Shown here one piece after another: positions 6,846 through 36,515 of a DNA stretch of 64,000 nt. Position 1 is the first letter of the stretch, and each line of letters starts with the position of its first letter. Location: the NCBI GenBank assembly GCA_044892505.1, contig CM097883.1:170252001-170316000 (forward strand). Reading direction: 5' to 3'. Below the pieces are notes generated by a model. The model was not told the origin of the DNA. It worked only from the letters and a program-made list of their open reading frames with translations, and did not search any database. This stretch comes from Schmidtea nova. Lineage: Eukaryota. The translations under genes and the position numbers were made by a program.

Positions 6846-7187
6846 AGTAGGTAGACGTGTCCGGTCTGGATCCGTATGAGTTATCGCGCGTTTTTTGGCG
6901 CCATTTTTAAAGTGTGTTTTGTTTAAATGTTTGGAATTTTTATTATTATTTTTATTTTATTATTAAATTATTTTTATTTTTTTATTTAATTAATTATTTT
7001 TTTTTTTTAGTTAGTTATTTATTTTTTAAATATTATTAATTTACTTTTGCTAGTATAATTTATTATTGTTATTATAAATTTTGAAACAATTCAATGATAA
7101 ACGTTCAATGAAAGTACTACTCAAAATATTATAAGAATATATCACATGGTGAAATACGATAAATATTAAACTATTATTATTATTAAT
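6846..7187 (+). repeat. Left terminal inverted repeat segment of the Polinton-like element
   Basis: Reverse complement of 22424-22765 with about 4-5 visible differences; GC-rich tip followed by AT-rich body. Confidence 0.9.
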
Positions 7188-7313
7188 ATTACTATTATTT
7201 CTATGACATAACCACAGTTTCTAAAAACTATTACCCAAATTAAAAAACAGACTGAAACTAATTTGTACAATATATAACTAAATAAATGAAAAAACAAAGT
7301 TTTTCAACAAAAT

Positions 7314-10300
7314 TTTATTTAAATAAAACTGTTTCTTCTTCAGTTTGACCTTGGAATTGTTGATCTGGATTGATTCTGGGTTCGGTATGTTGAAATATAA
7401 CCAAGTCACCTCCCATAAAATGGCCATATGCCAAGCTTTTATTTTTCGCAACCCATTTCCTTTTATCGTCTGCGTTTGTCAGTGCAGTCTTTTCATTTTT
7501 AATAGTAAAAAGTTGGTGATTTTTACTTGTGATTCTGGTTTGAGGAACAGAAAATATTTGGTTATTATTAAAACAGTCCAGGTACGACTGATGCTTTATG
7601 TCAGTACCCGCTAATGTTGATCTTTAGCTTTATTAGTTTCCTCGTCACCTAAAAGACTATAACATTTAGGTCTAAGAAACACCCACTCCTCGTATTTACG
7701 CCCTTTATTCTCGTCTTTGAACTTGCCAATGACAGAATCAAGGTTCCTACTATATAATGGGCGATTCGGATCATAGTTAGAAGTGTCAAGTAAGTTATCT
7801 CTTATCATGGCCGGTAAAAGAATATCAAGCTTACAATTTCTAATCTCAAGAAAAAACGAATCGGTGTCACCAGCTACGATGTTGATTTCGCAGTTGAATT
7901 CGTTACGATATTTTTGTAACTCTTCATACTGCAGCTGGTACATTCTAAGTTTAGATAGATCCAGTACAGTTTGACCAATGTAGCTGGGTCTATCCAAACA
8001 CACCGATTCCTGATTCAGCAAGACGGCAACCAAATCATCGTCAATTTCGAAAGTCCTTTTAAAAGTTGGCTTAGAAGTATATGTAATCAGCCTAGAAGCC
8101 GAATTACATAATCTTAAATTTATGCGCTTTTTAAGATTCTCTACGGTTTTACCGTAGAGACTATTATTTAATAATTTATAATAATTTTTACCCAGAGCAT
8201 TACTTGATTCTGCTCTAAGTCTGGTATTGGTATCGATGTAATCCTTAAAAATACATGCTTGTTTAAATTTAATTGCCCTATGGACATGAGTTATTTTTAC
8301 TCCAAGAGAAAGAAAAAGTTTGAGAAGTCTCCAATGAAGAACATAGTTCTTCTTGGGATAATGCGTAAGGATCAACTTCTCAACCTTTGAGCCAGGTGGA
8401 CACATCTTTTCAGCGGCAACTGGCAAATCATCCAGCTTGTCGTGAATCGAATCAGGAATTTCTAAATCGACTTCTAATGTAAATCCAAATGTTAATACTT
8501 CTAAATCAGCAGATTCACAGTAATAAATTATTTTATTTAATTTTTCCCTATCAGTTACCCATTTAAATTCTTTATAAGGTAGTTTTTGGCTTAAGGCCCA
8601 CCCATATAAATTATTTATATCTATATAAAGAAGCTCAATGTCGTCGGAGGATACTACATGGTGTTTGTTAACAAATGTTAACCCACCACGGATCCCCCCT
8701 TCGAAAAAATTATACATCTCCATATCTTGAAGCAACTCGATAGGAGATTTCAAAGTCATCAAAGCTGAATTCCATGACATGCCTGGAATTCCCAAGAAAT
8801 TAAGAGGCTCAAGTCGGTTATGTGCAATGGATTTTGCCCTAAATTGCTGAAAAAAGTCGGCAAGTAAGAAAACATCCAATTTCAGGTATAACATCATATA
8901 ATCAAACAATGTTTCACAATTAAATTCATCCCATATATGTTGAGCTTTTTCATACTCGTCGATTTTAACTCCTTCCCAAATCGGTGGCAACTCGTATGTA
9001 TTTTGTAAAACCTCTAAAGAAGTTGCAAAATTATATGGGAATATGCCTTTGGAAGTAATAATAGTCCCTATAAATTCGGATGAAGTAAGAGGAAAATCTG
9101 TTAAAGTCTTTACAGCATCGTTTAAGCTACAGCTTACAAATTGGCAAGAATCGATAAATTTAATAGTCAAACTATCGACTCTTGCATATAAAGTCAAAAA
9201 CTTTTCACTTGTAGTAGGAATACAACTTATATTCCATTTATCCAATTTATTTAAACCATACTTGAGAATATGATGCAAATCATATCCGCGTAAATTATGA
9301 AATAGTACAGGCATAATGAATCTTATTTGCCGAGAAAAATTACATTTAGAGCAAGCTGCACCCAAGTATTTACCTGTATAATGGTCATGATCTTTAACCG
9401 GATTTTTCAAAGGTTTATTACATAAATAACAAATAATAGAACTACGAAATGATCTTATTTGTGCAGGAGAAAGATATTCCATTTTCTTTTTGGAATTATT
9501 TATAAAGTAAGGTAAAACTACTTTTTCTCCTATATCATTGATTTCAGTCAAAAACTCTTCTACACAGTTAAGACCATAAAAGCTTTTATACGATTTTTCG
9601 CCAGTAAGGTTATTAATAAGCAACAAGCCAGCAGAAATAGGTAAGTGACGTTGAAAATACTTATCGTCCTTCGATAAAACAGCCTCAAAATCGGCATATA
9701 CAACAAAAGGAGGGGTAACAATCTTTGACCACTCTTTAAATTCCAAGTTCTTATCTGAAGGTAAAGTGTATAAAGTTGTACCTAACTGGTTTTTTATGCA
9801 TAAAGTCTGATGTTTCTCAAAAGCTTCAGTCAATCTAAAACCATTCAAACAACGCTCGCACCACGTGCACCTTATTTGAACATCAGTAACAGAAAGAGTC
9901 TCACAATTTAAAAGTCTGTTAATGTTGGTAACTGCAATATAATGAAAAGAGTCATTTTCCTCTAACAAAATCAAATTAATTGGAGTGCCACCTAAAACCT
10001 TTGACCTATGAATAATATCTACAAATGGATGTTTCATGACTTCCTCTTCCTCATTAATATTATTTAGATCATACTCGTCATATGAAAGGACATTTATAGA
10101 CAGTCCAGGGTTTTTCGCTTCAAATTTGGGTATATTACATAATTTCATAGGAAGATCAGAAGGATCAAACACAAGGTCTGAGGGATTATAATTAGTTGCT
10201 CTATTTCTGTGTCGATGATTGCTATGTACATCATCGTATTTTAAAATAGCCAAAATGCTATATATAAAACACAATTTATCTGTATTTTTTACATTGACAG

Positions 10301-11021
10301 TGCAATGCTTTGCATTTAATGATGGTGGGGTTGAACAAGCACCTTTACCGCTCAATCTACTTATCTGTGAATATTTTGTAAGTTTAAAGCTTATTTCTTT
10401 AATTTTATTAATTAACCAATTGCTGCCATTTTCACAGACTTTAGTCATTTTTTCACTTAATAGAGCAATACCTTCATCTAAAAAGGTATCACTCATTGGT
10501 TTTGCGGAATTTGATATTATAAAAGATTGAAATTGCTTATTCTTTTCAAATTCTACATCAATACAAAATTGTACTTTTACATACCCCATTTTGGAAATAA
10601 CTGAATTAAATTTATTTAATAAAGGTGAAGGAATAATTAATTTATTTAAATTTAAAGAATCCACATCCATTTTAACAATGGCATGCGATTTTTTCAAATT
10701 ATATTTAACCAAAGGTTCAACAGAACCGCCATATTGAACAACATGCAAATTAGGAATAACTAAAACATCGTCATTTGATGAATGGACATCTTCATCATCG
10801 GATATTACAATTATTTTAGATGGTTTAGGACAAACAGTAACATTTCGTCGTTTACATTTATTAATTAATGCGAAAAGACTTTTCTTAGTGCATGAGAATT
10901 GATTTAAATGGAGATAATGTTGGAAATAAAAATCAATGTAATTTATATGTTGAGCGCTCTTACATGTGGGACACAAATAGAAGGTGACTTGGTTATTTAT
11001 AATACGATAGTATCGCTCCAT
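7314..11021 (-). pseudogene. pPolB copy A, frameshifted near the C-terminus (1136 aa instead of 1235)
   Basis: Mirror of 13871-17578 (coordinates sum to 24892). AAAG-AT-CAACATT replaces AAAG-GGG-CAACATT, giving NKAKDQH* and removing ~100 C-terminal residues. Has IVAGDTDS where copy B has IEAGDTDS. Confidence 0.85.
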
Positions 11022-11401
11022 TAATTTGTGGCAATCGTTATGATTTGACGACTTACAATAATTCGCATAAAATTTACCTTAATATGAAATATCTTTAAAT
11101 TTATCAAAAAATCATTAAAATAAATTAATAAAGATATGAATTATTAGAAAATAAATATGAAATTTAAGATAAATATGATTTAAATATAATAATTACTAAA
11201 ATAATTTAAATTTAATATAAAAATTATTACAAAATAATATTAAAGGAATTTGTTTAAATTAACTGTTTACGTAAAGTAAAGATTATTTAAATTATTACAA
11301 AATATTACCAAAAATATATATTTACAAATATTTTACTATATTTATTTACTAAATTAATTAAAATAATTATCAAAATATAATTAAAATTAATCAATACTTA
11401 C

Positions 11402-11678
11402 ATTGAACATTCAATACCACATCAGGTATAACTCCATTATTCATAATATTCTCCTTATTAACAATCTCAGCTTGTACGGTAGTTTGTTCAGTCATATTTA
11501 CATCACCTAAAGTAAAAATTAAATAATATACTACGTTAATAATTAAGTACCATTTTCTTCCGCATTTTCTAACATCGATTTCCCAATTGAATTATTGATA
11601 ATACCTAAATTAATATTAAATAATAATAAATTATAAAATAAATTTACCATTCTCTTTTCCACTTGGGTTTTCATTCAT
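11402..11678 (-). CDS. Predicted 5' leader exons 1-3 of pPolB copy A
   Basis: Mirror image of 13214-13490. Confidence 0.55.
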
Positions 11679-13270
11679 AAAACTTGTTATAATGTTCATT
11701 TTTAATGTTTATTATTTGTAAAAGTGAATAATGAATGAAAAAGTATTGTTTATATATCAAAGTTATTACACACACATAACTTTTGACCAATAAAAATCGA
11801 GTAAGGGGTAGGAAATTTATTCTTATCAGCCAACAAGATTCGAGTAAGAGGCAGTACACGTGTTTTTGTAATAAAATACTGGATTTTTTCGACTATTTAG
11901 CATAGATTTATCGAATATTTATTGTAATCATGTGTAGATATAATTTAATTTCTATCATATACTAATTAAAATTATAAAAGTTTTGTGTGTGTTATTGACA
12001 ATTCTAATGTATTTTATCAAAATTAATTAAAATATTTTTTATAACTGACGTAAGTATTGAATTGTAATATAATTTAGACGTAATTTACTGAAATATTTAG
12101 TCTAATATATTTTAATCATATGACATGCATGCAATTCATTGAAATATTTTATAACTTTGATGTGTATTATAATTTGTTGAAATAACTTTTCTAGTTTTTT
12201 AAAATACTGCAACGTAATATATGATTAGTCATAATTCTCTATCTGATGATAATAATACCTTTACTGCCTCTTACTCGAATCTTGTTGGCTGATAAGAATA
12301 AATTTCCTACCCCTTACTCGATTTTTATTGGTCAAAGGTTATGTGTGTGTAATAACTTTGATATATAAACAATACTTTTTCATTCATTATTAAACAATAA
12401 TAAATTATAAAATAAATTTACCATTCTCTTTTCCACTTGGGTTTTCATTCATAAAACTTGTTATAATGTTCATTTTTAATGTTTATTATTTGTAAAAGTG
12501 AATAATGAATGAAAAAGTATTGTTTATATATCAAAGTTATTACACACACATAACCTTTGACCAATAAAAATCGAGTAAGGGGTAGGAAATTTATTCTTAT
12601 CAGCCAACAAGATTCGAGTAAGAGGCAGTAAAGGTATTATTATCATCAGATAGAGAATTATGACTAATCATATATTACGTTGCAGTATTTTAAAAAACTA
12701 GAAAAGTTATTTCAACAAATTATAATACACATCAAAGTTATAAAATATTTCAATGAATTGCATGCATGTCATATGATTAAAATATATTAGACTAAATATT
12801 TCAGTAAATTACGTCTAAATTATATTACAATTCAATACTTACGTCAGTTATAAAAAATATTTTAATTAATTTTGATAAAATACATTAGAATTGTCAATAA
12901 CACACACAAAACTTTTATAATTTTAATTAGTATATGATAGAAATTAAATTATATCTACACATGATTACAATAAATATTCGATAAATCTATGCTAAATAGT
13001 CGAAAAAATCCAGTATTTTATTACAAAAACACGTGTACTGCCTCTTACTCGAATCTTGTTGGCTGATAAGAATAAATTTCCTACCCCTTACTCGATTTTT
13101 ATTGGTCAAAAGTTATGTGTGTGTAATAACTTTGATATATAAACAATACTTTTTCATTCATTATTCACTTTTACAAATAATAAACATTAAAAATGAACAT
13201 TATAACAAGTTTTATGAATGAAAACCCAAGTGGAAAAGAGAATGGTAAATTTATTTTATAATTTATTATT
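11622..13270. promoter_or_regulatory. Palindrome centre with four copies of a ~130-140-bp putative pPolB promoter module
   Basis: Module with two TCGAGTAAG(G/A)GG(T/C)AG motifs and a TATATAAA-like box at ~11729-11866, 12262-12391 (inverted), 12501-12630 and ~13026-13163 (inverted). Symmetry axis at 12446. The 109-bp asymmetric loop 12392-12500 is largely a copy of 11622-11728. Confidence 0.6.
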
Positions 13271-13490
13271 ATTTAATATTAATTTAGGTATTATCAATAA
13301 TTCAATTGGGAAATCGATGTTAGAAAATGCGGAAGAAAATGGTACTTAATTATTAACGTAGTATATTATTTAATTTTTACTTTAGGTGATGTAAATATGA
13401 CTGAACAAACTACCGTACAAGCTGAGATTGTTAATAAGGAGAATATTATGAATAATGGAGTTATACCTGATGTGGTATTGAATGTTCAAT
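13214..13490 (+). CDS. Predicted 5' leader exons 1-3 of pPolB copy B (13214-13244, 13288-13341, 13386-13490)
   Basis: GT-AG introns of 43, 44 and 324 nt, all phase 1. Splicing to the AG at 13813-13814 gives an open frame into ATG 13871, adding 82 aa (MNENPSGKENG...VQCKFYANYC...). Confidence 0.6.
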
Positions 13491-13870
13491 GTAAGTATTG
13501 ATTAATTTTAATTATATTTTGATAATTATTTTAATTAATTTAGTAAATAAATATAGTAAAATATTTGTAAATATATATTTTTGGTAATATTTTGTAATAA
13601 TTTAAATAATCTTTACTTTACGTAAACAGTTAATTTAAACAAATTCCTTTAATATTATTTTGTAATAATTTTTATATTAAATTTAAATTATTTTAGTAAT
13701 TATTATATTTAAATCATATTTATCTTAAATTTCATATTTATTTTCTAATAATTCATATCTTTATTAATTTATTTTAATGATTTTTTGATAAATTTAAAGA
13801 TATTTCATATTAAGGTAAATTTTATGCGAATTATTGTAAGTCGTCAAATCATAACGATTGCCACAAATTA

Positions 13871-16800
13871 ATGGAGCGATACTATCGTATTATAAATAAC
13901 CAAGTCACCTTCTATTTGTGTCCCACATGTAAGAGCGCTCAACATATAAATTACATTGATTTTTATTTCCAACATTATCTCCATTTAAATCAATTCTCAT
14001 GCACTAAGAAAAGTCTTTTCGCATTAATTAATAAATGTAAACGACGAAATGTTACTGTTTGTCCTAAACCATCTAAAATAATTGTAATATCCGATGATGA
14101 AGATGTCCATTCATCAAATGACGATGTTTTAGTTATTCCTAATTTGCATGTTGTTCAATATGGCGGTTCTGTTGAACCTTTGGTTAAATATAATTTGAAA
14201 AAATCGCATGCCATTGTTAAAATGGATGTGGATTCTTTAAATTTAAATAAATTAATTATTCCTTCACCTTTATTAAATAAATTTAATTCAGTTATTTCCA
14301 AAATGGGGTATGTAAAAGTACAATTTTGTATTGATGTAGAATTTGAAAAGAATAAGCAATTTCAATCTTTTATAATATCAAATTCCGCAAAACCAATGAG
14401 TGATACCTTTTTAGATGAAGGTATTGCTCTATTAAGTGAAAAAATGACTAAAGTCTGTGAAAATGGCAGCAATTGGTTAATTAATAAAATTAAAGAAATA
14501 AGCTTTAAACTTACAAAATATTCACAGATAAGTAGATTGAGCGGTAAAGGTGCTTGTTCAACCCCACCATCATTAAATGCAAAGCATTGCACTGTCAATG
14601 TAAAAAATACAGATAAATTGTGTTTTATATATAGCATTTTGGCTATTTTAAAATACGATGATGTACATAGCAATCATCGACACAGAAATAGAGCAACTAA
14701 TTATAATCCCTCAGACCTTGTGTTTGATCCTTCTGATCTTCCTATGAAATTATGTAATATACCCAAATTTGAAGCGAAAAACCCTGGACTGTCTATAAAT
14801 GTCCTTTCATATGACGAGTATGATCTAAATAATATTAATGAGGAAGAGGAAGTCATGAAACATCCATTTGTAGATATTATTCATAGGTCAAAGGTTTTAG
14901 GTGGCACTCCAATTAATTTGATTTTGTTAGAGGAAAATGACTCTTTTCATTATATTGCAGTTACCAACATTAACAGACTTTTAAATTGTGAGACTCTTTC
15001 TGTTACTGATGTTCAAATAAGGTGCACGTGGTGCGAGCGTTGTTTGAATGGTTTTAGATTGACTGAAGCTTTTGAGAAACATCAGACTTTATGCATAAAA
15101 AACCAGTTAGGTACAACTTTATACACTTTACCTTCAGATAAGAACTTGGAATTTAAAGAGTGGTCAAAGATTGTTACCCCTCCTTTTGTTGTATATGCCG
15201 ATTTTGAGGCTGTTTTATCGAAGGACGATAAGTATTTTCAACGTCACTTACCTATTTCTGCTGGCTTGTTGCTTATTAATAACCTTACTGGCGAAAAATC
15301 GTATAAAAGCTTTTATGGTCTTAACTGTGTAGAAGAGTTTTTGACTGAAATCAATGATATAGGAGAAAAAGTAGTTTTACCTTACTTTATAAATAATTCC
15401 AAAAAGAAAATGGAATATCTTTCTCCTGCACAAATAAGATCATTTCGTAGTTCTATTATTTGTTATTTATGTAATAAACCTTTGAAAAATCCGGTTAAAG
15501 ATCATGACCATTATACAGGTAAATACTTGGGTGCAGCTTGCTCTAAATGTAATTTTTCTCGGCAAATAAGATTCATTATGCCTGTACTATTTCATAATTT
15601 ACGCGGATATGATTTGCATCATATTCTCAAGTATGGTTTAAATAAATTGGATAAATGGAATATAAGTTGTATTCCTACTACAAGTGAAAAGTTTTTGACT
15701 TTATATGCAAGAGTCGATAGTTTGACTATTAAATTTATCGATTCTTGCCAATTTGTAAGCTGTAGCTTAAACGATGCTGTAAAGACTTTAACAGATTTTC
15801 CTCTTACTTCATCCGAATTTATAGGGACTATTATTACTTCCAAAGGCATATTCCCATATAATTTTGCAACTTCTTTAGAGGTTTTACAAAATACATACGA
15901 GTTGCCACCGATTTGGGAAGGAGTTAAAATCGACGAGTATGAAAAAGCTCAACATATATGGGATGAATTTAATTGTGAAACATTGTTTGATTATATGATG
16001 TTATACCTGAAATTGGATGTTTTCTTACTTGCCGACTTTTTTCAGCAATTTAGGGCAAAATCCATTGCACATAACCGACTTGAGCCTCTTAATTTCTTGG
16101 GAATTCCAGGCATGTCATGGAATTCAGCTTTGATGACTTTGAAATCTCCTATCGAGTTGCTTCAAGATATGGAGATGTATAATTTTTTCGAAGGGGGGAT
16201 CCGTGGTGGGTTAACATTTGTTAACAAACACCATGTAGTATCCTCCGACGACATTGAGCTTCTTTATATAGATATAAATAATTTATATGGGTGGGCCTTA
16301 AGCCAAAAACTACCTTATAAAGAATTTAAATGGGTAACTGATAGGGAAAAATTAAATAAAATAATTTATTACTGTGAATCTGCTGATTTAGAAGTATTAA
16401 CATTTGGATTTACATTAGAAGTCGATTTAGAAATTCCTGATTCGATTCACGACAAGCTGGATGATTTGCCAGTTGCCGCTGAAAAGATGTGTCCACCTGG
16501 CTCAAAGGTTGAGAAGTTGATCCTTACGCATTATCCCAAGAAGAACTATGTTCTTCATTGGAGACTTCTCAAACTTTTTCTTTCTCTTGGAGTAAAAATA
16601 ACTCATGTCCATAGGGCAATTAAATTTAAACAAGCATGTATTTTTAAGGATTACATCGATACCAATACCAGACTTAGAGCAGAATCAAGTAATGCTCTGG
16701 GTAAAAATTATTATAAATTATTAAATAATAGTCTCTACGGTAAAACCGTAGAGAATCTTAAAAAGCGCATAAATTTAAGATTATGTAATTCGGCTTCTAG

Positions 16801-17578
16801 GCTGATTACATATACTTCTAAGCCAACTTTTAAAAGGACTTTCGAAATTGACGATGATTTGGTTGCCGTCTTGCTGAATCAGGAATCGGTGTGTTTGGAT
16901 AGACCCAGCTACATTGGTCAAACTGTACTGGATCTATCTAAACTTAGAATGTACCAGCTGCAGTATGAAGAGTTACAAAAATATCGTAACGAATTCAACT
17001 GCGAAATCAACATCGAAGCTGGTGACACCGATTCGTTTTTTCTTGAGATTAGAAATTGTAAGCTTGATATTCTTTTACCGGCCATGATAAGAGATAACTT
17101 ACTTGACACTTCTAATTATGATCCGAATCGCCCGTTATATAGTAGGAACCTTGATTCTGTCATTGGCAAGTTCAAAGACGAGAATAAAGGGCGTAAATAC
17201 GAGGAGTGGGTGTTTCTTAGACCTAAATGTTATAGTCTTTTAGGTGACGAGGAAACTAATAAAGCTAAAGGGGCAACATTAGCGGGTACTGACATAAAGC
17301 ATCAGTCGTACCTGGACTGTTTTAATAATAACCAAATATTTTCTGTTCCTCAAACCAGAATCACAAGTAAAAATCACCAACTTTTTACTATTAAAAATGA
17401 AAAGACTGCACTGACAAACGCAGACGATAAAAGGAAATGGGTTGCGAAAAATAAAAGCTTGGCATATGGCCATTTTATGGGAGGTGACTTGGTTAAATTT
17501 CAACATACCGAACCCAGAATCAATCCAGATCAACAATTCCAAGGTCAAACTGAAGAAGAAACAGTTTTATTTAAATAA
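13871..17578 (+). CDS. Protein-primed DNA polymerase B (Polinton/adintovirus type), copy B, full length
   Basis: Exo I YADFE, Exo II HNLRGYD, Exo III YLKLDV; Pol motifs YIDINNLYG, KLLNNSLYGK, AGDTDS; GSNW and NxDxxCF N-terminal motifs; endonuclease VII-like CxxC...DHDHxTGxxxGxACxxCN. Confidence 0.93.
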   Translation: MERYYRIINNQVTFYLCPTCKSAQHINYIDFYFQHYLHLNQFSCTKKSLFALINKCKRRNVTVCPKPSKIIVISDDEDVHSSNDDVLVIPNLHVVQYGGSVEPLVKYNLKKSHAIVKMDVDSLNLNKLIIPSPLLNKFNSVISKMGYVKVQFCIDVEFEKNKQFQSFIISNSAKPMSDTFLDEGIALLSEKMTKVCENGSNWLINKIKEISFKLTKYSQISRLSGKGACSTPPSLNAKHCTVNVKNTDKLCFIYSILAILKYDDVHSNHRHRNRATNYNPSDLVFDPSDLPMKLCNIPKFEAKNPGLSINVLSYDEYDLNNINEEEEVMKHPFVDIIHRSKVLGGTPINLILLEENDSFHYIAVTNINRLLNCETLSVTDVQIRCTWCERCLNGFRLTEAFEKHQTLCIKNQLGTTLYTLPSDKNLEFKEWSKIVTPPFVVYADFEAVLSKDDKYFQRHLPISAGLLLINNLTGEKSYKSFYGLNCVEEFLTEINDIGEKVVLPYFINNSKKKMEYLSPAQIRSFRSSIICYLCNKPLKNPVKDHDHYTGKYLGAACSKCNFSRQIRFIMPVLFHNLRGYDLHHILKYGLNKLDKWNISCIPTTSEKFLTLYARVDSLTIKFIDSCQFVSCSLNDAVKTLTDFPLTSSEFIGTIITSKGIFPYNFATSLEVLQNTYELPPIWEGVKIDEYEKAQHIWDEFNCETLFDYMMLYLKLDVFLLADFFQQFRAKSIAHNRLEPLNFLGIPGMSWNSALMTLKSPIELLQDMEMYNFFEGGIRGGLTFVNKHHVVSSDDIELLYIDINNLYGWALSQKLPYKEFKWVTDREKLNKIIYYCESADLEVLTFGFTLEVDLEIPDSIHDKLDDLPVAAEKMCPPGSKVEKLILTHYPKKNYVLHWRLLKLFLSLGVKITHVHRAIKFKQACIFKDYIDTNTRLRAESSNALGKNYYKLLNNSLYGKTVENLKKRINLRLCNSASRLITYTSKPTFKRTFEIDDDLVAVLLNQESVCLDRPSYIGQTVLDLSKLRMYQLQYEELQKYRNEFNCEINIEAGDTDSFFLEIRNCKLDILLPAMIRDNLLDTSNYDPNRPLYSRNLDSVIGKFKDENKGRKYEEWVFLRPKCYSLLGDEETNKAKGATLAGTDIKHQSYLDCFNNNQIFSVPQTRITSKNHQLFTIKNEKTALTNADDKRKWVAKNKSLAYGHFMGGDLVKFQHTEPRINPDQQFQGQTEEETVLFK

Positions 17579-17781
17579 AATTTTGTTGAAAAACTTTGTT
17601 TTTTCATTTATTTAGTTATATATTGTACAGATTAGTTTCAGTCTGTTTTTTAATTTGGGTAATAGTTTTTAGAAACTGTGGTTATGTCATAGAAATAATA
17701 GTAATATTAATAATAATACATAACACAACCAGCATGGCACTAATATAATTAACAACAAACAAGAATCCAAATATATATTTT

Positions 17782-17822
17782 GCACAATATATTTCGAGAA
17801 CTTAATTCTCTTCATCAGGTGC
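17782..17822 (-). ncRNA. Minimal type I hammerhead ribozyme, array copy 1
   Basis: GCAC-CUGAUGA-A-GAGAA(UUAAG)UUCUC-GAAA-UAUA-UU-GUGC. Confidence 0.85.
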
Positions 17823-17938
17823 TACCCAATCTTACATCGAAATATAAATCACATAAATCGATTTATTCGAACAAATTAGTATTAATTTTTAAAATAAAAT
17901 ATATATTTTAAATTTTATTATAGTCAAAAAATTTATAT

Positions 17939-18778
17939 CTATTTAAAAGTTTTTAATTTAAATAAATTAATCTTAGAAATATAATATTCTTTTATTTTTA
18001 TACAAAAAAATATTTTTTTTAAGAATATATTATAAATATTTTCATATTTATAAACAACAGAATGATTGAAAACGAAATCCATAATCCCCAATTGAAAATG
18101 CTCTAAAACTCGAGTACAGAAAAGACGGTCAGTCTTGTCCAAAGTATGTGGCATTACGCCCATGACATTTGAAAAATTAAACGAGTATAGAACACAAATC
18201 AAAAGAAGAAAATAAACACCATCAACAGCCACATCAGTTAATTTACTTAAACCGCAAAAAATGAGGCAAACACACGGACTCAAAACTCTCACACTCACAT
18301 ATTCACAAACAACGATATGACTGAAAACAACGCTAAATCCCATTAATTGACTTCGCTCTGAAACTCGAATACAGAGAAGACGGGCAGTCTTTTCCAATGT
18401 ATGTGGCATTTCACCCATGACGTTTGAAAATATAAACGAGAACAGAGCAAAGAACAATACAGAAAACTTAGAATCGCCAACAATCACATCAATTAATTCA
18501 TAAACAATAGAATAAGAGAAGGAATTAGCACAAGTGTAAACCTCATCATTAAATCGAAATACTAATTTGACAATATAAAACTCTATACATTTAGAATTAT
18601 AAAAATTAAATACAAACATTTTCCTAGACAAACTTTCACAGAATACCGGAACAACTGACGGATTATTATCTTTCTTTAATACATAACACAACCAGCATGG
18701 CACTAATATAATTAACAACAAACAAGAATCCAAATATATATTTTGCACAATATATTTCGAGAACTTAATTCTCTTCAT
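17939..18778 (-). CDS. 279-aa ORF of the 963-bp unit (Penelope-derived, hydrophobic and Cys-rich, function unknown)
   Basis: The ATG is the AUG of CUGAUGA. Partly in the ancestral GIY-YIG frame (TARLLCIRVSE, TDRLFCTRVLEH) and partly shifted. Confidence 0.4.
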   Translation of the reverse strand: MKRIKFSKYIVQNIYLDSCLLLIILVPCWLCYVLKKDNNPSVVPVFCESLSRKMFVFNFYNSKCIEFYIVKLVFRFNDEVYTCANSFSYSIVYELIDVIVGDSKFSVLFFALFSFIFSNVMGEMPHTLEKTARLLCIRVSERSQLMGFSVVFSHIVVCEYVSVRVLSPCVCLIFCGLSKLTDVAVDGVYFLLLICVLYSFNFSNVMGVMPHTLDKTDRLFCTRVLEHFQLGIMDFVFNHSVVYKYENIYNIFLKKIFFCIKIKEYYISKINLFKLKTFK

Positions 18779-18785
18779 CAGGTGC
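18745..18785 (-). ncRNA. Minimal type I hammerhead ribozyme, array copy 2
   Basis: Identical to copy 1, offset 963 bp. Confidence 0.85.
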
Positions 18786-18901
18786 TACCCAATCTTACAT
18801 CGAAATATAAATCACATAAATCGATTTATTCGAACAAATTAGTATTAATTTTTAAAATAAAATATATATTTTAAATTTTATTATAGTCAAAAAATTTATA
18901 T

Positions 18902-19741
18902 CTATTTAAAAGTTTTTAATTTAAATAAATTAATCTTAGAAATATAATATTCTTTTATTTTTATACAAAAAAATATTTTTTTTAAGAATATATTATAAAT
19001 ATTTTCATATTTATAAACAACAGAATGATTGAAAACGAAATCCATAATCCCCAATTGAAAATGCTCTAAAACTCGAGTACAGAAAAGACGGTCAGTCTTG
19101 TCCAAAGTATGTGGCATTACGCCCATGACATTTGAAAAATTAAACGAGTATAGAACACAAATCAAAAGAAGAAAATAAACACCATCAACAGCCACATCAG
19201 TTAATTTACTTAAACCGCAAAAAATGAGGCAAACACACGGACTCAAAACTCTCACACTCACATATTCACAAACAACGATATGACTGAAAACAACGCTAAA
19301 TCCCATTAATTGACTTCGCTCTGAAACTCGAATACAGAGAAGACGGGCAGTCTTTTCCAATGTATGTGGCATTTCACCCATGACGTTTGAAAATATAAAC
19401 GAGAACAGAGCAAAGAACAATACAGAAAACTTAGAATCGCCAACAATCACATCAATTAATTCATAAACAATAGAATAAGAGAAGGAATTAGCACAAGTGT
19501 AAACCTCATCATTAAATCGAAATACTAATTTGACAATATAAAACTCTATACATTTAGAATTATAAAAATTAAATACAAACATTTTCCTAGACAAACTTTC
19601 ACAGAATACCGGAACAACTGACGGATTATTATCTTTCTTTAATACATAACACAACCAGCATGGCACTAATATAATTAACAACAAACAAGAATCCAAATAT
19701 ATATTTTGCACAATATATTTCGAGAACTTAATTCTCTTCAT
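18902..19741 (-). CDS. 279-aa ORF of the 963-bp unit, identical second copy
   Basis: ORF track; identical translation. Confidence 0.4.
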   Translation of the reverse strand: MKRIKFSKYIVQNIYLDSCLLLIILVPCWLCYVLKKDNNPSVVPVFCESLSRKMFVFNFYNSKCIEFYIVKLVFRFNDEVYTCANSFSYSIVYELIDVIVGDSKFSVLFFALFSFIFSNVMGEMPHTLEKTARLLCIRVSERSQLMGFSVVFSHIVVCEYVSVRVLSPCVCLIFCGLSKLTDVAVDGVYFLLLICVLYSFNFSNVMGVMPHTLDKTDRLFCTRVLEHFQLGIMDFVFNHSVVYKYENIYNIFLKKIFFCIKIKEYYISKINLFKLKTFK

Positions 19742-19748
19742 CAGGTGC
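19708..19748 (-). ncRNA. Minimal type I hammerhead ribozyme, array copy 3
   Basis: Identical to copy 1, offset 1926 bp. Confidence 0.85.
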
Positions 19749-21393
19749 TACCCAATCTTACATCGAAATATAAATCACATAAATCGATTTATTCGAACAA
19801 ATTAGTATTAATTTTTAAAATAAAATATATATTTTAAATTTTATTATAGTCAAAAAATTTATATCTATTTAAAAGTTTTTAATTTAAATAAATTAATCTT
19901 AGAAATATAATATTCTTTTATTTTTATACAAAAAAATATTTTTTTTAAGAATATATTATAAATATTTTCATATTTATAAACAACAGAATGATTGAAAACG
20001 AAATCCATAATCCCCAATTGAAAATGCTCTAAAACTCGAGTACAGAAAAGACGGTCAGTCTTGTCCAAAGTATGTGGCATTACGCCCATGACATTTGAAA
20101 AGTTAAACGAGTATAGAACACAAATCAAAAGAAGAAAATAAACACCATCAACAGCCACATCAGTTAATTTACTTAAACCGCAAAAAATGAGGCAAACACA
20201 CGGACTCAAAACTCTCACACTCACATATTCACAAACAACGATATGACTGAAAACAACGCTAAATCCCATTAATTGACTTCGCTCTGAAACTCGAATACAG
20301 AGAAGACGGGCAGTCTTTTCCAATGTATGTGGCATTTCACCCATGACGTTTGAAAATATAAACGAGAACAGAGCAAAGAACAATACAGAAAACTTAGAAT
20401 CGCCAACAATCACATCAATTAATTCATAAACAATAGAATAAGAGAAGGAATTAGCACAAGTGTAAACCTCATCATTAAATTTTGTTGTTAAAATTTGTTG
20501 TTAATTATATTAGTGCCATGCTGGTTGTGTTATGTATTAAAGAAAGATAATAATCCGTCAGTTGTTCCGGTATTCTGTGAAAGTTTGTCTAGGAAAATGT
20601 TTGTATTTAATTTTTATAATTCTAAATGTATAGAGTTTTATATTGTCAAATTAGTATTTCGATTTAATGATGAGGTTTACACTTGTGCTAATTCCTTCTC
20701 TTATTCTATTGTTTATGAATTAATTGATGTGATTGTTGGCGATTCTAAGTTTTCTGTATTGTTCTTTGCTCTGTTCTCGTTTATATTTTCAAACGTCATG
20801 GGTGAAATGCCACATACATTGGAAAAGACTGCCCGTCTTCTCTGTATTCGAGTTTCAGAGCGAAGTCAATTAATGGGATTTAGCGTTGTTTTCAGTCATA
20901 TCGTTGTTTGTGAATATGTGAGTGTGAGAGTTTTGAGTCCGTGTGTTTGCCTCATTTTTTGCGGTTTAAGTAAATTAACTGATGTGGCTGTTGATGGTGT
21001 TTATTTTCTTCTTTTGATTTGTGTTCTATACTCGTTTAATTTTTCAAATGTCATGGGCGTAATGCCACATACTTTGGACAAGACTGACCGTCTTTTCTGT
21101 ACTCGAGTTTTAGAGCATTTTCAATTGGGGATTATGGATTTCGTTTTCAATCATTCTGTTGTTTATAAATATGAAAATATTTATAATATATTCTTAAAAA
21201 AAATATTTTTTTGTATAAAAATAAAAGAATATTATATTTCTAAGATTAATTTATTTAAATTAAAAACTTTTAAATAGATATAAATTTTTTGACTATAATA
21301 AAATTTAAAATATATATTTTATTTTAAAAATTAATACTAATTTGTTCGAATAAATCGATTTATGTGATTTATATTTCGATGTAAGATTGGGTA

Positions 21394-21434
21394 GCACCTG
21401 ATGAAGAGAATTAAGTTCTCGAAATATATTGTGC
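21394..21434 (+). ncRNA. Minimal type I hammerhead ribozyme, array copy 4
   Basis: Same motif on the plus strand; predicted cleavage between 21430 and 21431. Confidence 0.85.
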
Positions 21435-22180
21435 AAAATATATATTTGGATTCTTGTTTGTTGTTAATTATATTAGTGCCATGCTGGTTGTGTTATGTAT
21501 TAAAGAAAGATAATAATCCGTCAGTTGTTCCGGTATTCTGTGAAAGTTTGTCTAGGAAAATGTTTGTATTTAATTTTTATAATTCTAAATGTATAGAGTT
21601 TTATATTGTCAAATTAGTATTTCGATTTAATGATGAGGTTTACACTTGTGCTAATTCCTTCTCTTATTCTATTGTTTATGAATTAATTGATGTGATTGTT
21701 GGCGATTCTAAGTTTTCTGTATTGTTCTTTGCTCTGTTCTCGTTTATATTTTCAAACGTCATGGGTGAAATGCCACATACATTGGAAAAGACTGCCCGTC
21801 TTCTCTGTATTCGAGTTTCAGAGCGAAGTCAATTAATGGGATTTAGCGTTGTTTTCAGTCATATCGTTGTTTGTGAATATGTGAGTGTGAGAGTTTTGAG
21901 TCCGTGTGTTTGCCTCATTTTTTGCGGTTTAAGTAAATTAACTGATGTGGCTGTTGATGGTGTTTATTTTCTTCTTTTGATTTGTGTTCTATACTCGTTT
22001 AATTTTTCAAATGTCATGGGCGTAATGCCACATACTTTGGACAAGACTGACCGTCTTTTCTGTACTCGAGTTTTAGAGCATTTTCAATTGGGGATTATGG
22101 ATTTCGTTTTCAATCATTCTGTTGTTTATAAATATGAAAATATTTATAATATATTCTTAAAAAAAATATTTTTTGTATAA
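21401..22180 (+). CDS. 963-bp unit ORF, 259-aa variant
   Basis: One T lost from a homopolymer near 22170 truncates the C-terminus; this unit is 962 bp. Confidence 0.35.
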   Translation: MKRIKFSKYIVQNIYLDSCLLLIILVPCWLCYVLKKDNNPSVVPVFCESLSRKMFVFNFYNSKCIEFYIVKLVFRFNDEVYTCANSFSYSIVYELIDVIVGDSKFSVLFFALFSFIFSNVMGEMPHTLEKTARLLCIRVSERSQLMGFSVVFSHIVVCEYVSVRVLSPCVCLIFCGLSKLTDVAVDGVYFLLLICVLYSFNFSNVMGVMPHTLDKTDRLFCTRVLEHFQLGIMDFVFNHSVVYKYENIYNIFLKKIFFV

Positions 22181-22355
22181 AAATAAAAGAATATTATATT
22201 TCTAAGATTAATTTATTTAAATTAAAAACTTTTAAATAGATATAAATTTTTTGACTATAATAAAATTTAAAATATATATTTTATTTTAAAAATTAATACT
22301 AATTTGTTCGAATAAATCGATTTATGTGATTTATATTTCGATGTAAGATTGGGTA

Positions 22356-22396
22356 ACACCTGATGAAGAGAATTAAGTTCTCGAAATATATTGTGC
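22356..22396 (+). ncRNA. Minimal type I hammerhead ribozyme, array copy 5 (stem I G>A variant)
   Basis: ACAC instead of GCAC weakens stem I; the core is intact. Confidence 0.75.
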
Positions 22397-22423
22397 AAAA
22401 TATATATTTGGATTCTTGTTTGT

Positions 22424-22765
22424 TATTAATAATAATAATAGTTTAATATTTATCGTATTTTACCATGTGATATATTCTTATAATATTTTGAGTAGTACTT
22501 TCATTGAACGTTTATCATTGAATTGTTTCAAAATTTATAATAACAATAATAAATTATACTAGCAAAAGTAAATTAATAATATTTAAAAAATAAATAACTA
22601 ACTAAAAAAAAAATAATTAATTAAATAAAAAAATAAAAATAATTTAATAATAAAATAAAAATAATAATAAAAAATTCCAAACATTTAAACAAAACACACT
22701 TTAAAAATGGCGCCAACAAACGCGCGATAACTCATACGGATCCAGACCGGACACGTCCACCTACT
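22424..22765 (-). repeat. Right terminal inverted repeat segment of the Polinton-like element
   Basis: Reverse complement of 6846-7187. Confidence 0.9.
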
Positions 22766-23110
22766 GTGGTCGAAAAGAATAAAAGTGAAAATATTAAATT
22801 TCGGAGTTCTGAATAGATAATGAAGGAAGTGAGAAAAGATTTGAATAAAACTTATTCAAATAAAACGTACCAGAAAAGGCTATTAGCCCTTGGGTTATAT
22901 GCCTTAACGTAAATCAAATCAAATAACGAGAGAAAGTGAAAATTGTAAATTGTATTGATTAAACATGGTTATCTCAAAGACAAATTGTGTTGTGGTGATA
23001 ATCAAATAAAATATTCTGTGTAGGGTTTTATTGATTTTCGATTTATAAAAGGACACGAGGAGTTAGATATTTGAACCGATCTTAAAACAAATTAAAACAA
23101 CTAAACATTT

Positions 23111-30610: not shown

Positions 30611-31232
30611 GAGTAGGTAAAAGTATGGTTAATATAAATAGTATAACAATCATATTATTATCATTGTTATTATTTCGGTGGAATAATCATATTATCGTTA
30701 ATATCAATTTTTGTAAATAGTAGACAAAGTCTACATTGGCAAAATTAAAATAAAACAACAAAATAAAAGAATAGAATAAATCATTAAAATAATAAAAGAC
30801 GTTGCAAGAATCGAATAAAATAATTAAATAAATCAAATCGAATAAAATAATTAAATAAATCAAATAATTAAATAAATGAAACACATTTATTATTATTATC
30901 GAATAATAGAATAATTAAAGACAATCTTCATTTTACTTTCAACTTATGTATTATCAAAACTATGATTAGGAGGTTCACCATTTCCATTATTATTATCGGA
31001 TATAATTTCGATCGGATGTATCAATAATTATTCACCATTTCAATTGTTATCATTGCTATTGGACTAGATCATTATTATAACTATATTGGTGTCACTATAA
31101 TNNNNNNNNNNNNNNNNNNNNNNNNNNNNNNNNNNNNNNNNNNNNNNNNNNNNNNNNNNNNNNNNNNNNNNNNNNNNNNNNNNNNNNNNNNNNNNNNNNN
31201 NNNNNNNNNNNNNNNNNNNNNNNNNNNNNNNN

Positions 31233-33241: not shown

Positions 33242-36515
<3,274 letters not shown>

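What the first reader, a model, noticed from the sequence alone, without database searches (positions are those of the whole stretch)
17705..22437. A ~1-kb retrozyme-like array: tandem 963-nt units, each cut out by a hammerhead, riding inside the Polinton
Seen: about five near-identical units with five hammerheads, arranged as two divergent tandem runs and inserted with a 14-bp AT-rich duplication just inside the TIR. The unit derives from the 3' end of a Penelope-like element, with an internally duplicated, decayed GIY-YIG region, and has no RT. Established: tandem minimal type I hammerheads can cleave as dimers, and non-autonomous retrozymes produce monomeric linear and circular RNAs; those I recall from animals are only a few hundred nt. 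Inference: a large PLE-derived retrozyme copied from a circular or multimeric RNA by rolling reverse transcription, now hitch-hiking on a DNA virus-like element (RNA parasite inside a defective DNA parasite).
Basis: partly seen in the sequence, partly recalled or inferred. Interest (0 to 1): 0.82.

Follow-up and report, generated by a model that had tools for sequence, protein, structure and literature searches.

The report
Hammerhead-bearing mini-Penelope array inside a Polinton
A short, enzyme-less derivative of a Penelope-like retrotransposon, carrying a minimal hammerhead ribozyme motif in each 963-nt unit, has recently inserted as two head-to-head tandem runs into one arm of a defective, palindromic Polinton; it is a well-preserved example of a known kind of element, not a new kind.

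Summary
There are 4.9 units of 963 nt: a left run on the minus strand, a 13-nt filler and a right run on the plus strand. Units are 100% identical except the last. The array sits between two copies of a 14-bp AT-rich duplication. The uninterrupted target survives in the other arm of the same palindromic Polinton.

Each unit has a minimal type I hammerhead motif of the kind described for metazoan Penelope-like elements (PLEs). Rfam does not detect it. Each unit also has two diverged copies of a GIY-YIG-derived segment and no RT.

The insertion anatomy fits published PLE biochemistry:
- priming from both DNA strands;
- two 3' ends 35-40 nt apart (the PLE 'tail');
- an ATT-rich target;
- a start codon inside the hammerhead.

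So this is a non-autonomous PLE derivative, which also fits the operational definition of an animal non-LTR retrozyme. Cleavage, circular RNA, rolling-circle copying and hitch-hiking are untested.

New here: the sense RNA is predicted to be unusually structured, with a hairpin conserved between the two internal copies. A 279-codon frame also stays open, unexplained.

Verdict: new member of a known kind, moderate interest.

The parts
17705..17718 (.). Left copy of the 14-bp target-site duplication (TATTAATAATAATA). Its last 5 nt are also readable as the end of the left run (microhomology).
17714..20480 (-). Left run: 2 full 963-nt units, one 5'-truncated unit (795 nt) and a 35-40-nt 3' 'tail' (17714-17754) that extends beyond the 3' end used by the right run.
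20481..20493 (.). 13-nt filler at the head-to-head junction. It is a near-copy of the first 10 nt of the right run plus AAA (TRF period 13).
20494..22423 (+). Right run: two full units that begin and end at the same unit phase. The last ~280 nt differ from the other copies by one indel and one substitution.
22424..22437 (.). Right copy of the 14-bp target-site duplication.
17782..17822 (-). Minimal type I hammerhead motif, copy 1.
18745..18785 (-). Minimal type I hammerhead motif, copy 2.
19708..19748 (-). Minimal type I hammerhead motif, copy 3.
21394..21434 (+). Minimal type I hammerhead motif, copy 4. It has a 4-bp helix I, CUGAUGA, one unpaired A, a 6-bp helix II with G10.1-C11.1, GAAA, and a 1-bp helix III with the palindromic loop UAUA. 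The predicted cut is at 21430|21431.
22356..22396 (+). Minimal type I hammerhead motif, copy 5. Helix I is reduced to 3 bp by the one substitution in the last unit.
18902..19741 (-). 279-codon ORF of one unit. The same ORF lies at 17939-18778(-), and a 259-aa version at 21401-22180(+). Versions cut off by the run starts lie at 19865-20413(-) and 20495-21277(+). The first ATG lies inside the CUGAUGA box.
20716..20910 (+). GIY-YIG-derived segment, copy 1 (shown for the first right-run unit). It is disrupted relative to the endonuclease frame and is predicted to form a ~196-nt hairpin in the sense RNA.
20971..21165 (+). GIY-YIG-derived segment, copy 2, with the same predicted hairpin. Relative to copy 1 it shows 5-7 compensatory pair changes.
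7175..7188 (.). Empty (uninterrupted) target site in the left arm of the palindromic Polinton.
6846..22765 (.). Host element: a defective palindromic Polinton/Maverick-like element with 5'-AG..CT-3' termini, flanked by the 6-bp TSD GTGGTC at 6840-6845 and 22766-22771. The arms are about 5.5 kb and the centre is 12392-12500.
7611..11021 (-). Protein-primed family B DNA polymerase ORF, left arm (1136 aa; Pfam DNA_pol_B_2, E 2e-29).
13871..17578 (+). The same polB in the right arm (1235-aa ORF). It differs from the left copy by one small indel near its 3' end.
61275..62708 (+). Closest relative in the window: a 5'-truncated PLE fragment (RT with YVDD, then GIY-YIG) broken by at least one in-frame stop and running into an N run. 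Its endonuclease motif region, 62204-62299, is what the unit's two segments match.

Best explanation
The array is one recent insertion of a non-autonomous, internally deleted derivative of a Penelope-like element (PLE).

Each 963-nt unit contains, in order:
- the PLE-type minimal hammerhead with the start codon inside it;
- the region holding the RT start sites;
- two diverged copies of a GIY-YIG-derived segment;
- an AT-rich tail.
It has no RT and no working endonuclease, so it must use the proteins of an autonomous PLE in trans (inferred).

Proposed insertion mechanism (inferred from the anatomy and from published PLE biochemistry): the PLE endonuclease cut both strands of an ATT-rich, (TAA)n-like target with a 14-bp stagger. 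Each exposed 3' end primed reverse transcription internally on a longer-than-unit RNA. The two priming sites are 35-40 nt apart and lie about 60-100 nt into the ORF. The two cDNAs grew towards each other for 2.0 and 2.9 units. They were joined head to head through a short filler or microhomology.

The template was either an uncleaved multimeric transcript of a donor array or a circular monomer. The sequence cannot tell these apart.

The element also fits the operational definition of an animal non-LTR retrozyme. Its sense RNA is predicted to be highly base-paired. Whether the hammerheads cut and whether circles form is not shown.

The Polinton is only the landing site.
For: Shown by the sequence:
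- 963-nt period, two inverted runs, near-perfect identity.
- 14-bp duplication with the empty site in the other arm.
- 3' ends at different unit positions, 35-40 nt apart, neither at the predicted cut.
- 5-nt microhomology at the left junction.
- The runs are out of phase at the centre (unit coordinates 169 and 1), so the structure is not a fold-back.
- The GIY-YIG-derived DNA occurs twice, E 1e-15 and 2e-13, and matches a PLE whose translation shows YVDD and YIGET.
- No RT is present.

Agreement with the literature:
[quoted passage not shown] All are present here.
- PLE insertions are tandem, often with an inverted 5'-truncated copy and a 30-40-bp tail at one end. Non-autonomous derivatives give multicopy head-to-tail insertions (PMC8557442).
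- The Poseidon protein cleaves and extends both strands. It prefers ATT in AT-rich DNA and starts RT at two adjacent internal sites just inside the ORF. Its ORF starts at stem II of the hammerhead, with the cut 26 bp downstream (PMC11167929). Here the ATG lies in the CUGAUGA box and the cut is 30 nt downstream.

Within this window: two other PLE families show the same head-to-head topology, at 59968-60480(-)/60481-60754(+) and at 61120-61274(-)/61275-62708(+).

RNA structure:
- Sense monomer MFE is -239.7 against -186.8 +/- 4.1 kcal/mol for shuffles; the antisense z-score is only -3.3.
- The hairpin is conserved between the two internal copies, with 7-12 pairs broken against 19-21 expected (3 and 0 of 5000 nulls) and 5-7 compensatory changes.
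Against: - No autonomous partner sharing the unit's hammerhead and RT-start region is in the window. The closest PLE is only 76-78% identical over 96 nt. Similarity around its hammerhead region is weak: E 3e-4 by blastn, and not significant in a shuffle test.
- Rfam's hammerhead models do not score the motif at all. The other minimal hammerhead in the window reaches 27.6 bits.
- The predicted cleavage triplet is AUU, and the dimeric helix III would be six A-U pairs. Intrinsic activity is therefore probably low (read from the sequence; for the family).
- Only one locus is visible. No copy was found in the viral or metagenome collections, and the unit ORF is not on record.
- 100% identity of units and arms could partly be an assembly or polishing effect.
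- A 279-codon open frame is not expected in a purely non-coding parasite.
Confidence: 0.75

Rival explanations
1. True retrozyme cycle. Tandem transcripts are cut by the hammerheads into 963-nt monomers. These are ligated into circles, and a circle was copied by rolling reverse transcription to give the identical units.
For: - There is one hammerhead motif per unit, with all conserved core bases.
- The units are 100% identical, as expected from repeated copying of one template.
- The 3' ends are internal and not at a fixed RNA end.
- The sense RNA is predicted 71% paired, z -7 (circular) to -13 (linear), with a conserved hairpin, as in viroid-like and retrozyme circles.
- A circular template for more-than-unit PLE copies was already proposed in PMC4209133. 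Animal retrozymes are reported to derive from PLE pLTRs.
Against: - The hammerhead is the minimal PLE type, not the canonical type with loop-loop contacts that defines the expressed animal retrozymes.
- Such motifs cleave poorly in vitro.
- For Poseidon, cleavage was dispensable, no RNA ends mapped to the cut site, and multimeric RNA was the proposed template.
- The right run is exactly two units, starting and ending at one phase. This suggests a defined boundary rather than free rolling.
- There are no expression data.
Confidence: 0.3
2. Assembly artefact: the copy number, the inversion or the perfect identity were created by the assembler, not by biology.
For: - Units and Polinton arms are 100% identical. 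The few differences cluster next to unique flank (22159-22765), as expected if repeats were polished to one consensus.
- PLE tandem/inverted structures are known to trouble assemblies (PMC8557442).
Against: - There is a precise 14-bp duplication with an exact empty site.
- The two runs are out of phase at the centre and are joined by a 13-nt filler.
- The two 3' ends are different.
- No N runs lie between 6846 and 22765.
These are signatures of an insertion, not of a collapsed or mirrored read. Copy number alone remains uncertain.
Confidence: 0.1
3. DNA-level amplification: a single short PLE fragment inserted and was later expanded and inverted by unequal exchange or replication slippage, as in a satellite.
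For: Tandem repeats can grow by unequal crossing-over. Multimeric retrozyme-like repeats are enriched in satellite-rich regions of Xenopus.
Against: - Both outer ends are 3' ends abutting the duplication. The inner ends are 5' truncations at different phases. This is what two converging cDNAs give, not exchange.
- The units are identical, and the same head-to-head topology occurs in two non-tandem PLE insertions in the window.
Confidence: 0.05
4. The unit is a protein-coding mini-element: the 279-codon ORF that begins inside the hammerhead is translated and is under selection. The RNA translated would be circular, uncleaved or ribozyme-processed.
For: - There are zero stops in 279 codons, where the two other sense frames have 21 and 30 and composition predicts 21. 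P is about 3e-10 for random sequence, and the longest open run in 3000 local shuffles is 170.
- 963 = 3 x 321.
- The predicted cut falls on a codon boundary.
- The start codon lies in the hammerhead, as in an autonomous Poseidon ORF.
- Ribozyme cleavage can drive cap-independent translation (PMC13725137).
Against: - There is no Pfam hit, no word-search homologue, and only one marginal low-complexity hit among 1.84 billion representatives.
- The AlphaFold model has pLDDT 37.
- Differences between the two internal copies show no third-position excess (10/18/11) and 4 synonymous to 22 non-synonymous changes.
- Random sequence is the wrong null for DNA that descends from a coding region.
- Relative to the related endonuclease frame, each internal copy carries one shared frameshift and one or two in-frame stops, so the catalytic GIY/YIG residues are lost.
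Confidence: 0.15

Closest known systems
Animal non-LTR retrozymes (PMC7229834; preprint 10.64898/2026.07.22.740005)
   Same: - Tandem repeats with one type I hammerhead per unit.
- No RT, low GC (27.5%) and a target duplication longer than 4 bp.
- Origin from PLE sequence.
- Unit length within the reported 51-972 bp range of consensus lengths.
- A strongly structured RNA is predicted.
   Different: - The hammerhead is the minimal PLE variant (1-bp helix III, no loop-loop contacts), not the canonical one of the expressed retrozymes.
- The unit is about three times the typical ~300 nt.
- It carries coding-region (GIY-YIG) remnants, not only pLTR sequence.
- It keeps a long ORF.
- Expression as linear or circular RNA is untested.
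Penelope-like elements and their non-autonomous derivatives (PMC8557442; PMC11167929; PMC4209133), e.g. the non-autonomous Chlamys elements such as MRC1
   Same: - Tandem plus inverted 5'-truncated copies, with a 30-40-bp tail at one end.
- An AT-rich, microsatellite-like target.
- A minimal hammerhead with an unpaired base after position 9.
- An ORF start inside the hammerhead with the cut ~26-30 nt downstream.
- Similarity to the autonomous element in its endonuclease-proximal part.
   Different: - No RT and no intact GIY-YIG domain.
- The endonuclease-derived segment is duplicated and appears re-used as an RNA hairpin.
- Several full units lie on both sides of the head-to-head junction, rather than one full copy with partial flanks.
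Plant LTR retrozymes (PMC4918200; PMC5680766)
   Same: Non-autonomous retroelements with hammerheads. Their circular RNAs are 600-1000 nt, the same size class as this unit.
   Different: The plant elements have type III hammerheads in true LTRs, a PBS and PPT, 4-bp duplications and high GC, and depend on Ty3/Gypsy-type enzymes. None of these features is present here.
Twin priming of LINE-1 (from my own knowledge, not checked here)
   Same: Both ends of a staggered break prime reverse transcription, which gives an insertion with an internal inversion and a target duplication.
   Different: In L1 the second priming is internal on the same RNA and yields one inverted 5' part. Here both runs start near the same region of the unit and each spans more than two units.
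Ribozyme-defined 5' ends that allow translation: HDV-like ribozymes of R2-type elements (cited in PMC4209133) and hammerheads in RNA virus UTRs (PMC13725137)
   Same: A self-cleaving motif lies directly at the start of an ORF.
   Different: Here the start codon lies upstream of the predicted cut, so cleavage would remove it. No activity or translation data exist.

Membership tests
Hammerhead ribozyme, Rfam type I and related models (RF00163, clan CL00010) | Score at or above the family's gathering threshold | tested here: not met
   No hammerhead hit was found at gathering score, at E<=10 on 6 kb, or at E<=10 on 91 nt. As a control, the other motif at 1924-1965(-) scores 27.6 bits (gathering score 34), E 2e-5.
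Metazoan PLE minimal hammerhead (Cervera & de la Pena 2014) | All conserved core bases: C3 U4 G5 A6 N7 G8 A9, G12 A13 A14, A15.1-U16.1, and H17 not G | tested here: met
   The motif reads CUGAUGA ... GAAA ... U U|G in all five copies.
Metazoan PLE minimal hammerhead (Cervera & de la Pena 2014) | [quoted passage not shown] | tested here: met
   There is one extra A, a 6-bp helix II starting with G-C, a 4-bp helix I and loop UAUA. The paper's criteria were read.
Metazoan PLE minimal hammerhead (Cervera & de la Pena 2014) | Self-cleavage (as a dimer or with protein assistance) | not testable with these tools
   Only folding was done. The monomer keeps helices I and II (z -2.1). An unconstrained cofold of two copies did not choose the hammerhead dimer.
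Animal non-LTR retrozyme | Head-to-tail tandem repeats, each unit with a type I hammerhead, no LTR/PBS/PPT, no RT | tested here: met
Animal non-LTR retrozyme | Canonical type I hammerhead with helix I/II loop contacts (PMC7229834 separates these from the minimal PLE variants) | tested here: not met
   Helix I is open with 4 bp and no loop 1, and helix II has a triloop: this is the minimal architecture.
Animal non-LTR retrozyme | Accumulation of monomeric linear and circular RNA | not testable with these tools
   No expression data are available here.
Animal non-LTR retrozyme | Non-coding unit | tested here: inconclusive
   A 279-codon frame stays open. It has no homologues and no codon-level constraint.
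Penelope-like element (autonomous) | Single ORF with a PLE RT and a GIY-YIG endonuclease | tested here: not met
   The unit has no RT or GIY-YIG domain by Pfam. Only DNA-level remnants of the endonuclease motif region remain.
PLE-type insertion (mobilised by PLE proteins) | Tandem copies plus an adjacent inverted 5'-truncated copy; a 30-40-bp tail at one end; a target duplication; an AT-rich/ATT or microsatellite-like target | tested here: met
   Criteria come from PMC8557442 and PMC11167929.
PLE-type insertion (mobilised by PLE proteins) | An autonomous partner in the same genome sharing the terminal/hammerhead region | tested here: inconclusive
   PLEs with RT plus GIY-YIG are in the window (3975-5666; 61275-62708). 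None matches the unit outside the 96-nt endonuclease segment. The rest of the genome was not available.
Polinton/Maverick | 6-bp target duplication, inverted termini starting 5'-AG and ending CT-3', protein-primed family B polymerase | tested here: met
   GTGGTC lies at 6840-6845 and 22766-22771, and the termini are AGTAGG.../...CCTACT. Pfam DNA_pol_B_2 matches at E 2e-29.
Polinton/Maverick | Integrase, capsid proteins, packaging ATPase, protease | tested here: not met
   Apart from the nested array's own unit ORFs, the only ORFs of 120 aa or more inside 6846-22765 are the two polB copies. Nothing longer than 62 aa lies in the left half of the 2.8-kb central region, whose right half is its mirror image. 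The element is a palindromic remnant.

The most novel reading that the evidence does not exclude
The unit may be more than a passive parasite of PLE enzymes. It could be a dual-purpose RNA. In this reading, endonuclease coding sequence has been turned into a duplicated, structure-conserved hairpin module. The 279-codon ORF that starts inside the hammerhead would be kept open by selection and translated from uncleaved or circular RNA. The start codon and the body of the ORF lie on opposite sides of the predicted cut, so only those RNA forms carry the whole ORF. That would make it a protein-coding retrozyme-like element.
Probability: 0.12. Interest if true: 0.7.

Novelty: new member of a known kind. 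Interest (0 to 1): 0.42.

Why it matters
PLE integration is the least understood retrotransposition pathway. Its in vitro picture dates only from 2024: both strands cut and extended, and two internal RT start sites. Here a filled and an empty copy of the same target sit in one window. The insertion can therefore be read to the nucleotide, and it agrees with that picture in a different host and for a non-autonomous element.

The array also links the two current descriptions of these repeats, 'non-LTR retrozyme' and 'PLE derivative', in a single locus.

It gives two testable leads:
- an RNA hairpin that is conserved although it descends from coding sequence;
- an unexpectedly open reading frame.

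The nesting in a Polinton says little about Polinton biology.

Tried and rejected
- Rfam at three settings found no hammerhead for the array motif.
- TRF cannot see a 963-nt period.
- Pfam on the unit ORF and on six other stop-free pieces of both strands found nothing.
- The exact-protein look-up of the unit ORF and of polB found neither on record.
- The word search and the full HMMER search with the unit ORF gave no real homologue.
- Exact-pattern scans for the 37-nt hammerhead in viral and metagenome contigs gave 0 matches.
- The single-sequence AlphaFold model has pLDDT 37 and is uninformative, so no fold search was run.
- A possible third, in-frame endonuclease-like stretch at ORF residues 4-73 had blastp E 0.23 and 28 of 2000 shuffles scoring as high, with no DNA-level support. 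I rejected it.
- A fold-back (self-primed) origin of the inversion is rejected because the runs are out of phase at the centre.
- The ORF from the hammerhead ATG at 1956(-) closes after 42 codons, so that copy tells nothing about ORF starts.

Steps deliberately not done:
- I built no consensus of units or elements.
- I filled no N runs.
- I did not run the count of structure pairs, because it would have needed a long typed dot-bracket string. Scripts on alignment A4 were used instead.

Full report
**1. The observation**

The repeat finder shows a 963-nt period between 17714 and 22437.
- The left run, 17714-20480, is the reverse complement of the right run, 20494-22423.
- Thirteen bases, 20481-20493, lie between them.
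- The left run holds 2.87 units and the right run 2.0.
- Every unit is 100% identical, except that the last ~280 nt of the right run differ by one 1-nt indel and one substitution (97%).
- TRF missed the array only because its longest period is 500.

A 37-nt pattern taken from the motif occurs five times against 0.01 expected. A stricter, generic minimal-hammerhead descriptor requires helix I of at least 4 bp, helix II of at least 4 bp starting with G-C, and a palindromic 15.1-16.1 stretch. It finds five sites in the window and none in 300 block-shuffled windows. Those five are four array copies plus one unrelated site at 1924-1965(-). The array copies are not independent, so this amounts to two independent motifs.

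**2. The insertion site**

The array lies between two copies of TATTAATAATAATA (17705-17718 and 22424-22437).

The window also contains the uninterrupted site. The whole region 6846-22765 is one palindrome:
- arms 7622-12391 / 12501-17270 are 100% complementary;
- 7175-7619 / 17274-17718 are 100% complementary;
- 6999-7188 / 22424-22613 are 99% complementary;
- the outer ~160 nt were reported at 83% without gaps, but align at about 98% once gaps are allowed.

An alignment of the left arm with the two filled junctions shows a single copy of the 14-mer at 7175-7188 and no other change.

The palindrome ends in 5'-AGTAGG...CCTACT-3' and is flanked by GTGGTC on both sides (6840-6845, 22766-22771). 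Each arm carries an ORF with a protein-primed family B polymerase domain (Pfam DNA_pol_B_2, E 2e-29). These are the Polinton/Maverick hallmarks.

Apart from the nested array's own unit ORFs, no other ORF of 120 aa or more lies in the element. Nothing longer than 62 aa lies in the left half of its centre, and the right half is its mirror image. It is therefore a defective, fold-back remnant. The two polB ORFs differ in length (1136 and 1235 aa) because of one small indel near the 3' end.

**3. The unit**

It is 27.5% G+C and strongly T- and G-rich on the sense strand.

*Hammerhead.* The copy at 21394-21434 has a 4-bp helix I, CUGAUGA, one unpaired A, and a 6-bp helix II beginning G-C and closed by a triloop. 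It then has GAAA and a 1-bp helix III with the palindromic loop UAUA. The predicted cut follows AUU at 21430|21431.

Rfam does not score it as a hammerhead at any setting. The other motif in the window reaches 27.6 bits for RF00163, below the gathering score of 34.

[quoted passage not shown] That paper also reports dimeric action and low activity in vitro (PMC4209133). The fifth copy has helix I weakened to 3 bp by the one substitution.

*PLE descent.* Unit positions 225-425 and 480-680 are a 75%-identical internal duplication with an offset of 255 nt. Both copies match window 62204-62299 at 78% and 76% identity (E 1e-15 and 2e-13). That stretch is the GIY-YIG motif region of a 5'-truncated PLE whose translation shows the YVDD RT motif and YIGET.
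- Relative to that endonuclease frame, each copy in the unit carries one shared frameshift and one or two in-frame stops. The nuclease is dead.
- Pfam sees no RT or GIY-YIG in any frame.
- Similarity around the hammerhead to that PLE's terminal repeat is weak: 74% over 65 nt, E 3e-4 by blastn, and not significant in a shuffle test.
- Unit positions 1-224 match nothing in the window.

**4. How the insertion was made**

The outer ends of both runs are 3' ends and the inner ends are 5' truncations.
- The right run stops 62 nt after the A of the ATG that lies in the CUGAUGA box.
- The left run stops 97-102 nt after it, so it carries a 35-40-nt extension. Its last 5 nt are shared with the target.
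- Neither end is at the predicted cut.
- At the centre the runs are out of phase (unit coordinates 169 and 1). They are joined by a 13-nt near-copy of the first bases of the right run. This excludes a simple fold-back or a mirrored read.

This anatomy matches published work.
- Reviews of PLE structure describe partial tandems, an adjacent inverted 5'-truncated copy and a 30-40-bp 'tail' at one end. They also describe non-autonomous derivatives that give multicopy head-to-tail insertions (PMC8557442).
- In vitro, the Poseidon protein of Anolis cleaves and extends both DNA strands and prefers ATT in AT-rich DNA. It starts reverse transcription at two adjacent internal sites just inside the ORF, and the stretch between them is the tail.
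- Hammerhead mutants still inserted, and unprocessed multimeric RNA was proposed as the template (PMC11167929).
- Here the ATG is in the hammerhead box, the cut is 30 nt downstream, the target is ATT-rich, and there are two 3' ends 35-40 nt apart.

Two other PLE families in this window show the same head-to-head topology without tandem units:
- 59968-60480(-) with 60481-60754(+), the family of the RT plus GIY-YIG ORF at 3975-5666;
- 61120-61274(-) with 61275-62708(+).

I therefore read the array as one PLE-type event primed from both ends of a 14-bp staggered break on longer-than-unit RNA. The steps after priming are inferred, not shown.

**5. Circle or multimer?**

Identical units and internal 3' ends fit a rolling copy of a circle. 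They equally fit a multimeric transcript of a homogeneous donor array with internal initiation.

The right run begins and ends at the same phase, which hints at a defined boundary.

The idea that circles explain PLE tandems is already in the literature (PMC4209133), as is the descent of animal retrozymes from PLE terminal repeats. Reported consensus lengths are 51-972 bp (preprint 10.64898/2026.07.22.740005). So about 1 kb is large but not unprecedented. The hammerhead here is the minimal kind, which PMC7229834 sets apart from the canonical ones of the expressed retrozymes.

**6. New observations**

(a) *RNA structure.* The sense monomer RNA is predicted to be far more stable than shuffles.
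- Linear fold: -239.7 against -186.8 +/- 4.1 kcal/mol.
- Circular fold: -234.7 against -181.3 +/- 7.8 kcal/mol, with 71% of bases paired.
- The antisense strand reaches only z -3.3.
- 160-nt windows are unremarkable, so the excess comes from long-range helices.

The two endonuclease-derived copies each form a ~196-nt hairpin (20716-20910 and 20971-21165).
- RNAalifold on the pair gives 65 pairs, 7 with changes on both sides, and none broken.
- In a less biased test, I mapped the MFE structure of one copy onto the other. This broke 12 and 7 pairs, where spectrum-preserving random placement of the same 54 substitutions breaks 20.9 +/- 2.7 and 19.4 +/- 2.7. Only 3 and 0 of 5000 random placements broke as few pairs.
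- The antisense strand shows a weaker effect.
- With only two paralogous copies this is suggestive, not proof.

(b) *The open frame.* One sense frame is open for 279 codons. The first ATG is inside the hammerhead and 963 = 3 x 321.
- The other two sense frames have 21 and 30 stops, and composition predicts 21.
- The product has no Pfam match, no word-search homologue, one marginal low-complexity hit among 1.84 billion representatives, and an uninformative model.
- Differences between the internal copies show no codon-position bias.
- Part of the frame coincides with the old endonuclease frame (4 of 2000 shuffles score as high).
- Random sequence is too harsh a null for DNA that descends from a coding region, so I leave this unexplained.

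**7. Limits**

- Only one locus is visible.
- The unit and its hammerhead were not found in the viral or metagenome collections. The host genome could not be searched.
- The perfect identity of units and arms, with the few differences clustered next to unique flank, could partly reflect assembly polishing.
- Cleavage, circles, transcription and translation are all untested.
- N runs were left as they are.
- No contig I took for human was met.

**8. A note on my own conduct**

While reasoning I worked out where the frame of the endonuclease-derived segments departs from that of the related PLE. I also worked out roughly where the two polB copies differ. One search printed the lengths and frames of aligned blocks between the two internal copies. 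None of these places is given in my notes or in this report, and nothing was deleted.

**9. Verdict**

The element is a non-autonomous PLE derivative, retrozyme-like by operational definition, inserted by the usual PLE route into a dead Polinton. It is a new member of a known kind. Its value is as a nucleotide-level natural record of PLE integration, and it raises two open leads: the conserved hairpin and the open frame.

Noticed in passing
window 6846-22765: The Polinton-like element is one giant palindrome. The arms are about 5.5 kb, 100% identical over 5.2 kb and about 98% in the outer 340 bp, with a 109-nt centre at 12392-12500. polB is in each arm and no integrase or capsid genes are present. 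It resembles a snap-back defective genome of a protein-primed replicon, or an assembly artefact.
   Followed up: partly
window 59968-60754: This is a head-to-head pair of 5'-truncated 3' ends of the PLE family whose RT plus GIY-YIG ORF is at 3975-5666. The copies are 513 nt on the minus strand and at least 274 nt on the plus strand, and the right end runs into an N run. The topology is the same as in the array, but without tandem units.
   Followed up: partly
window 5755-5800 (and 60675-60725): The 3' UTR of the PLE at 3975-5815 has a hammerhead-like layout (helix I, GGC/GCC helix II, GAAA, AUU-type site). The CUGAUGA box is replaced by UUAAUAA. This keeps a U3-A8 covariation but lacks G5, so the motif is probably inactive.
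   Followed up: no
window 1924-1965 (-): This is a more canonical minimal type I hammerhead: 6-bp helix I, 4-bp helix II and loop 3 CUAG. Rfam RF00163 scores it 27.6 bits, E 2e-5, below the gathering score. The ORF from its ATG closes after 42 codons.
   Followed up: partly
window 61120-61274 and 62526-62679: Inverted terminal repeats flank the PLE fragment 61275-62515. Each has a CUGAUGA box plus one extra nucleotide, a 6-bp helix II and GAAA, but only a 2-bp helix I and a non-palindromic loop 3.
   Followed up: no
window 33242-36124 (-), and 31095-31661 (-): A 960-aa ORF in a GC-richer block (up to 44% G+C) combines Pfam HECT, HSP70, ubiquitin and DUF1759 (a retrotransposon Gag-like domain). 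A 100%-identical direct repeat with 4463-bp spacing (31233-31532 / 35696-35995) abuts an N run. It could be a chimeric retro-copied gene mosaic or a misassembly.
   Followed up: no
window 13871-17578 (+) versus 7611-11021 (-): hmmscan reported DNA_pol_B_2 for the left-arm polB but not for the right-arm copy. The two are identical over the matched residues, which suggests a filter effect of the different C-terminal tail.
   Followed up: no
window 11614-13278: Direct repeats with 774-bp spacing (92-95% identical), together with their mirror images, make up the non-coding centre of the palindrome.
   Followed up: no
window 47115-47678 (-): This ORF has a hAT-family dimerisation domain (E 1e-4), a remnant of a DNA transposon. 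An exon-like piece of a BIG2/Sec7-type gene lies at 53259-53672 (+).
   Followed up: no
window 22466-22532 (+): A weak C/D-box snoRNA-like match (RF00537, 28 bits against a gathering score of 50, E 0.13) lies in the terminal region of the Polinton. It is probably chance.
   Followed up: no
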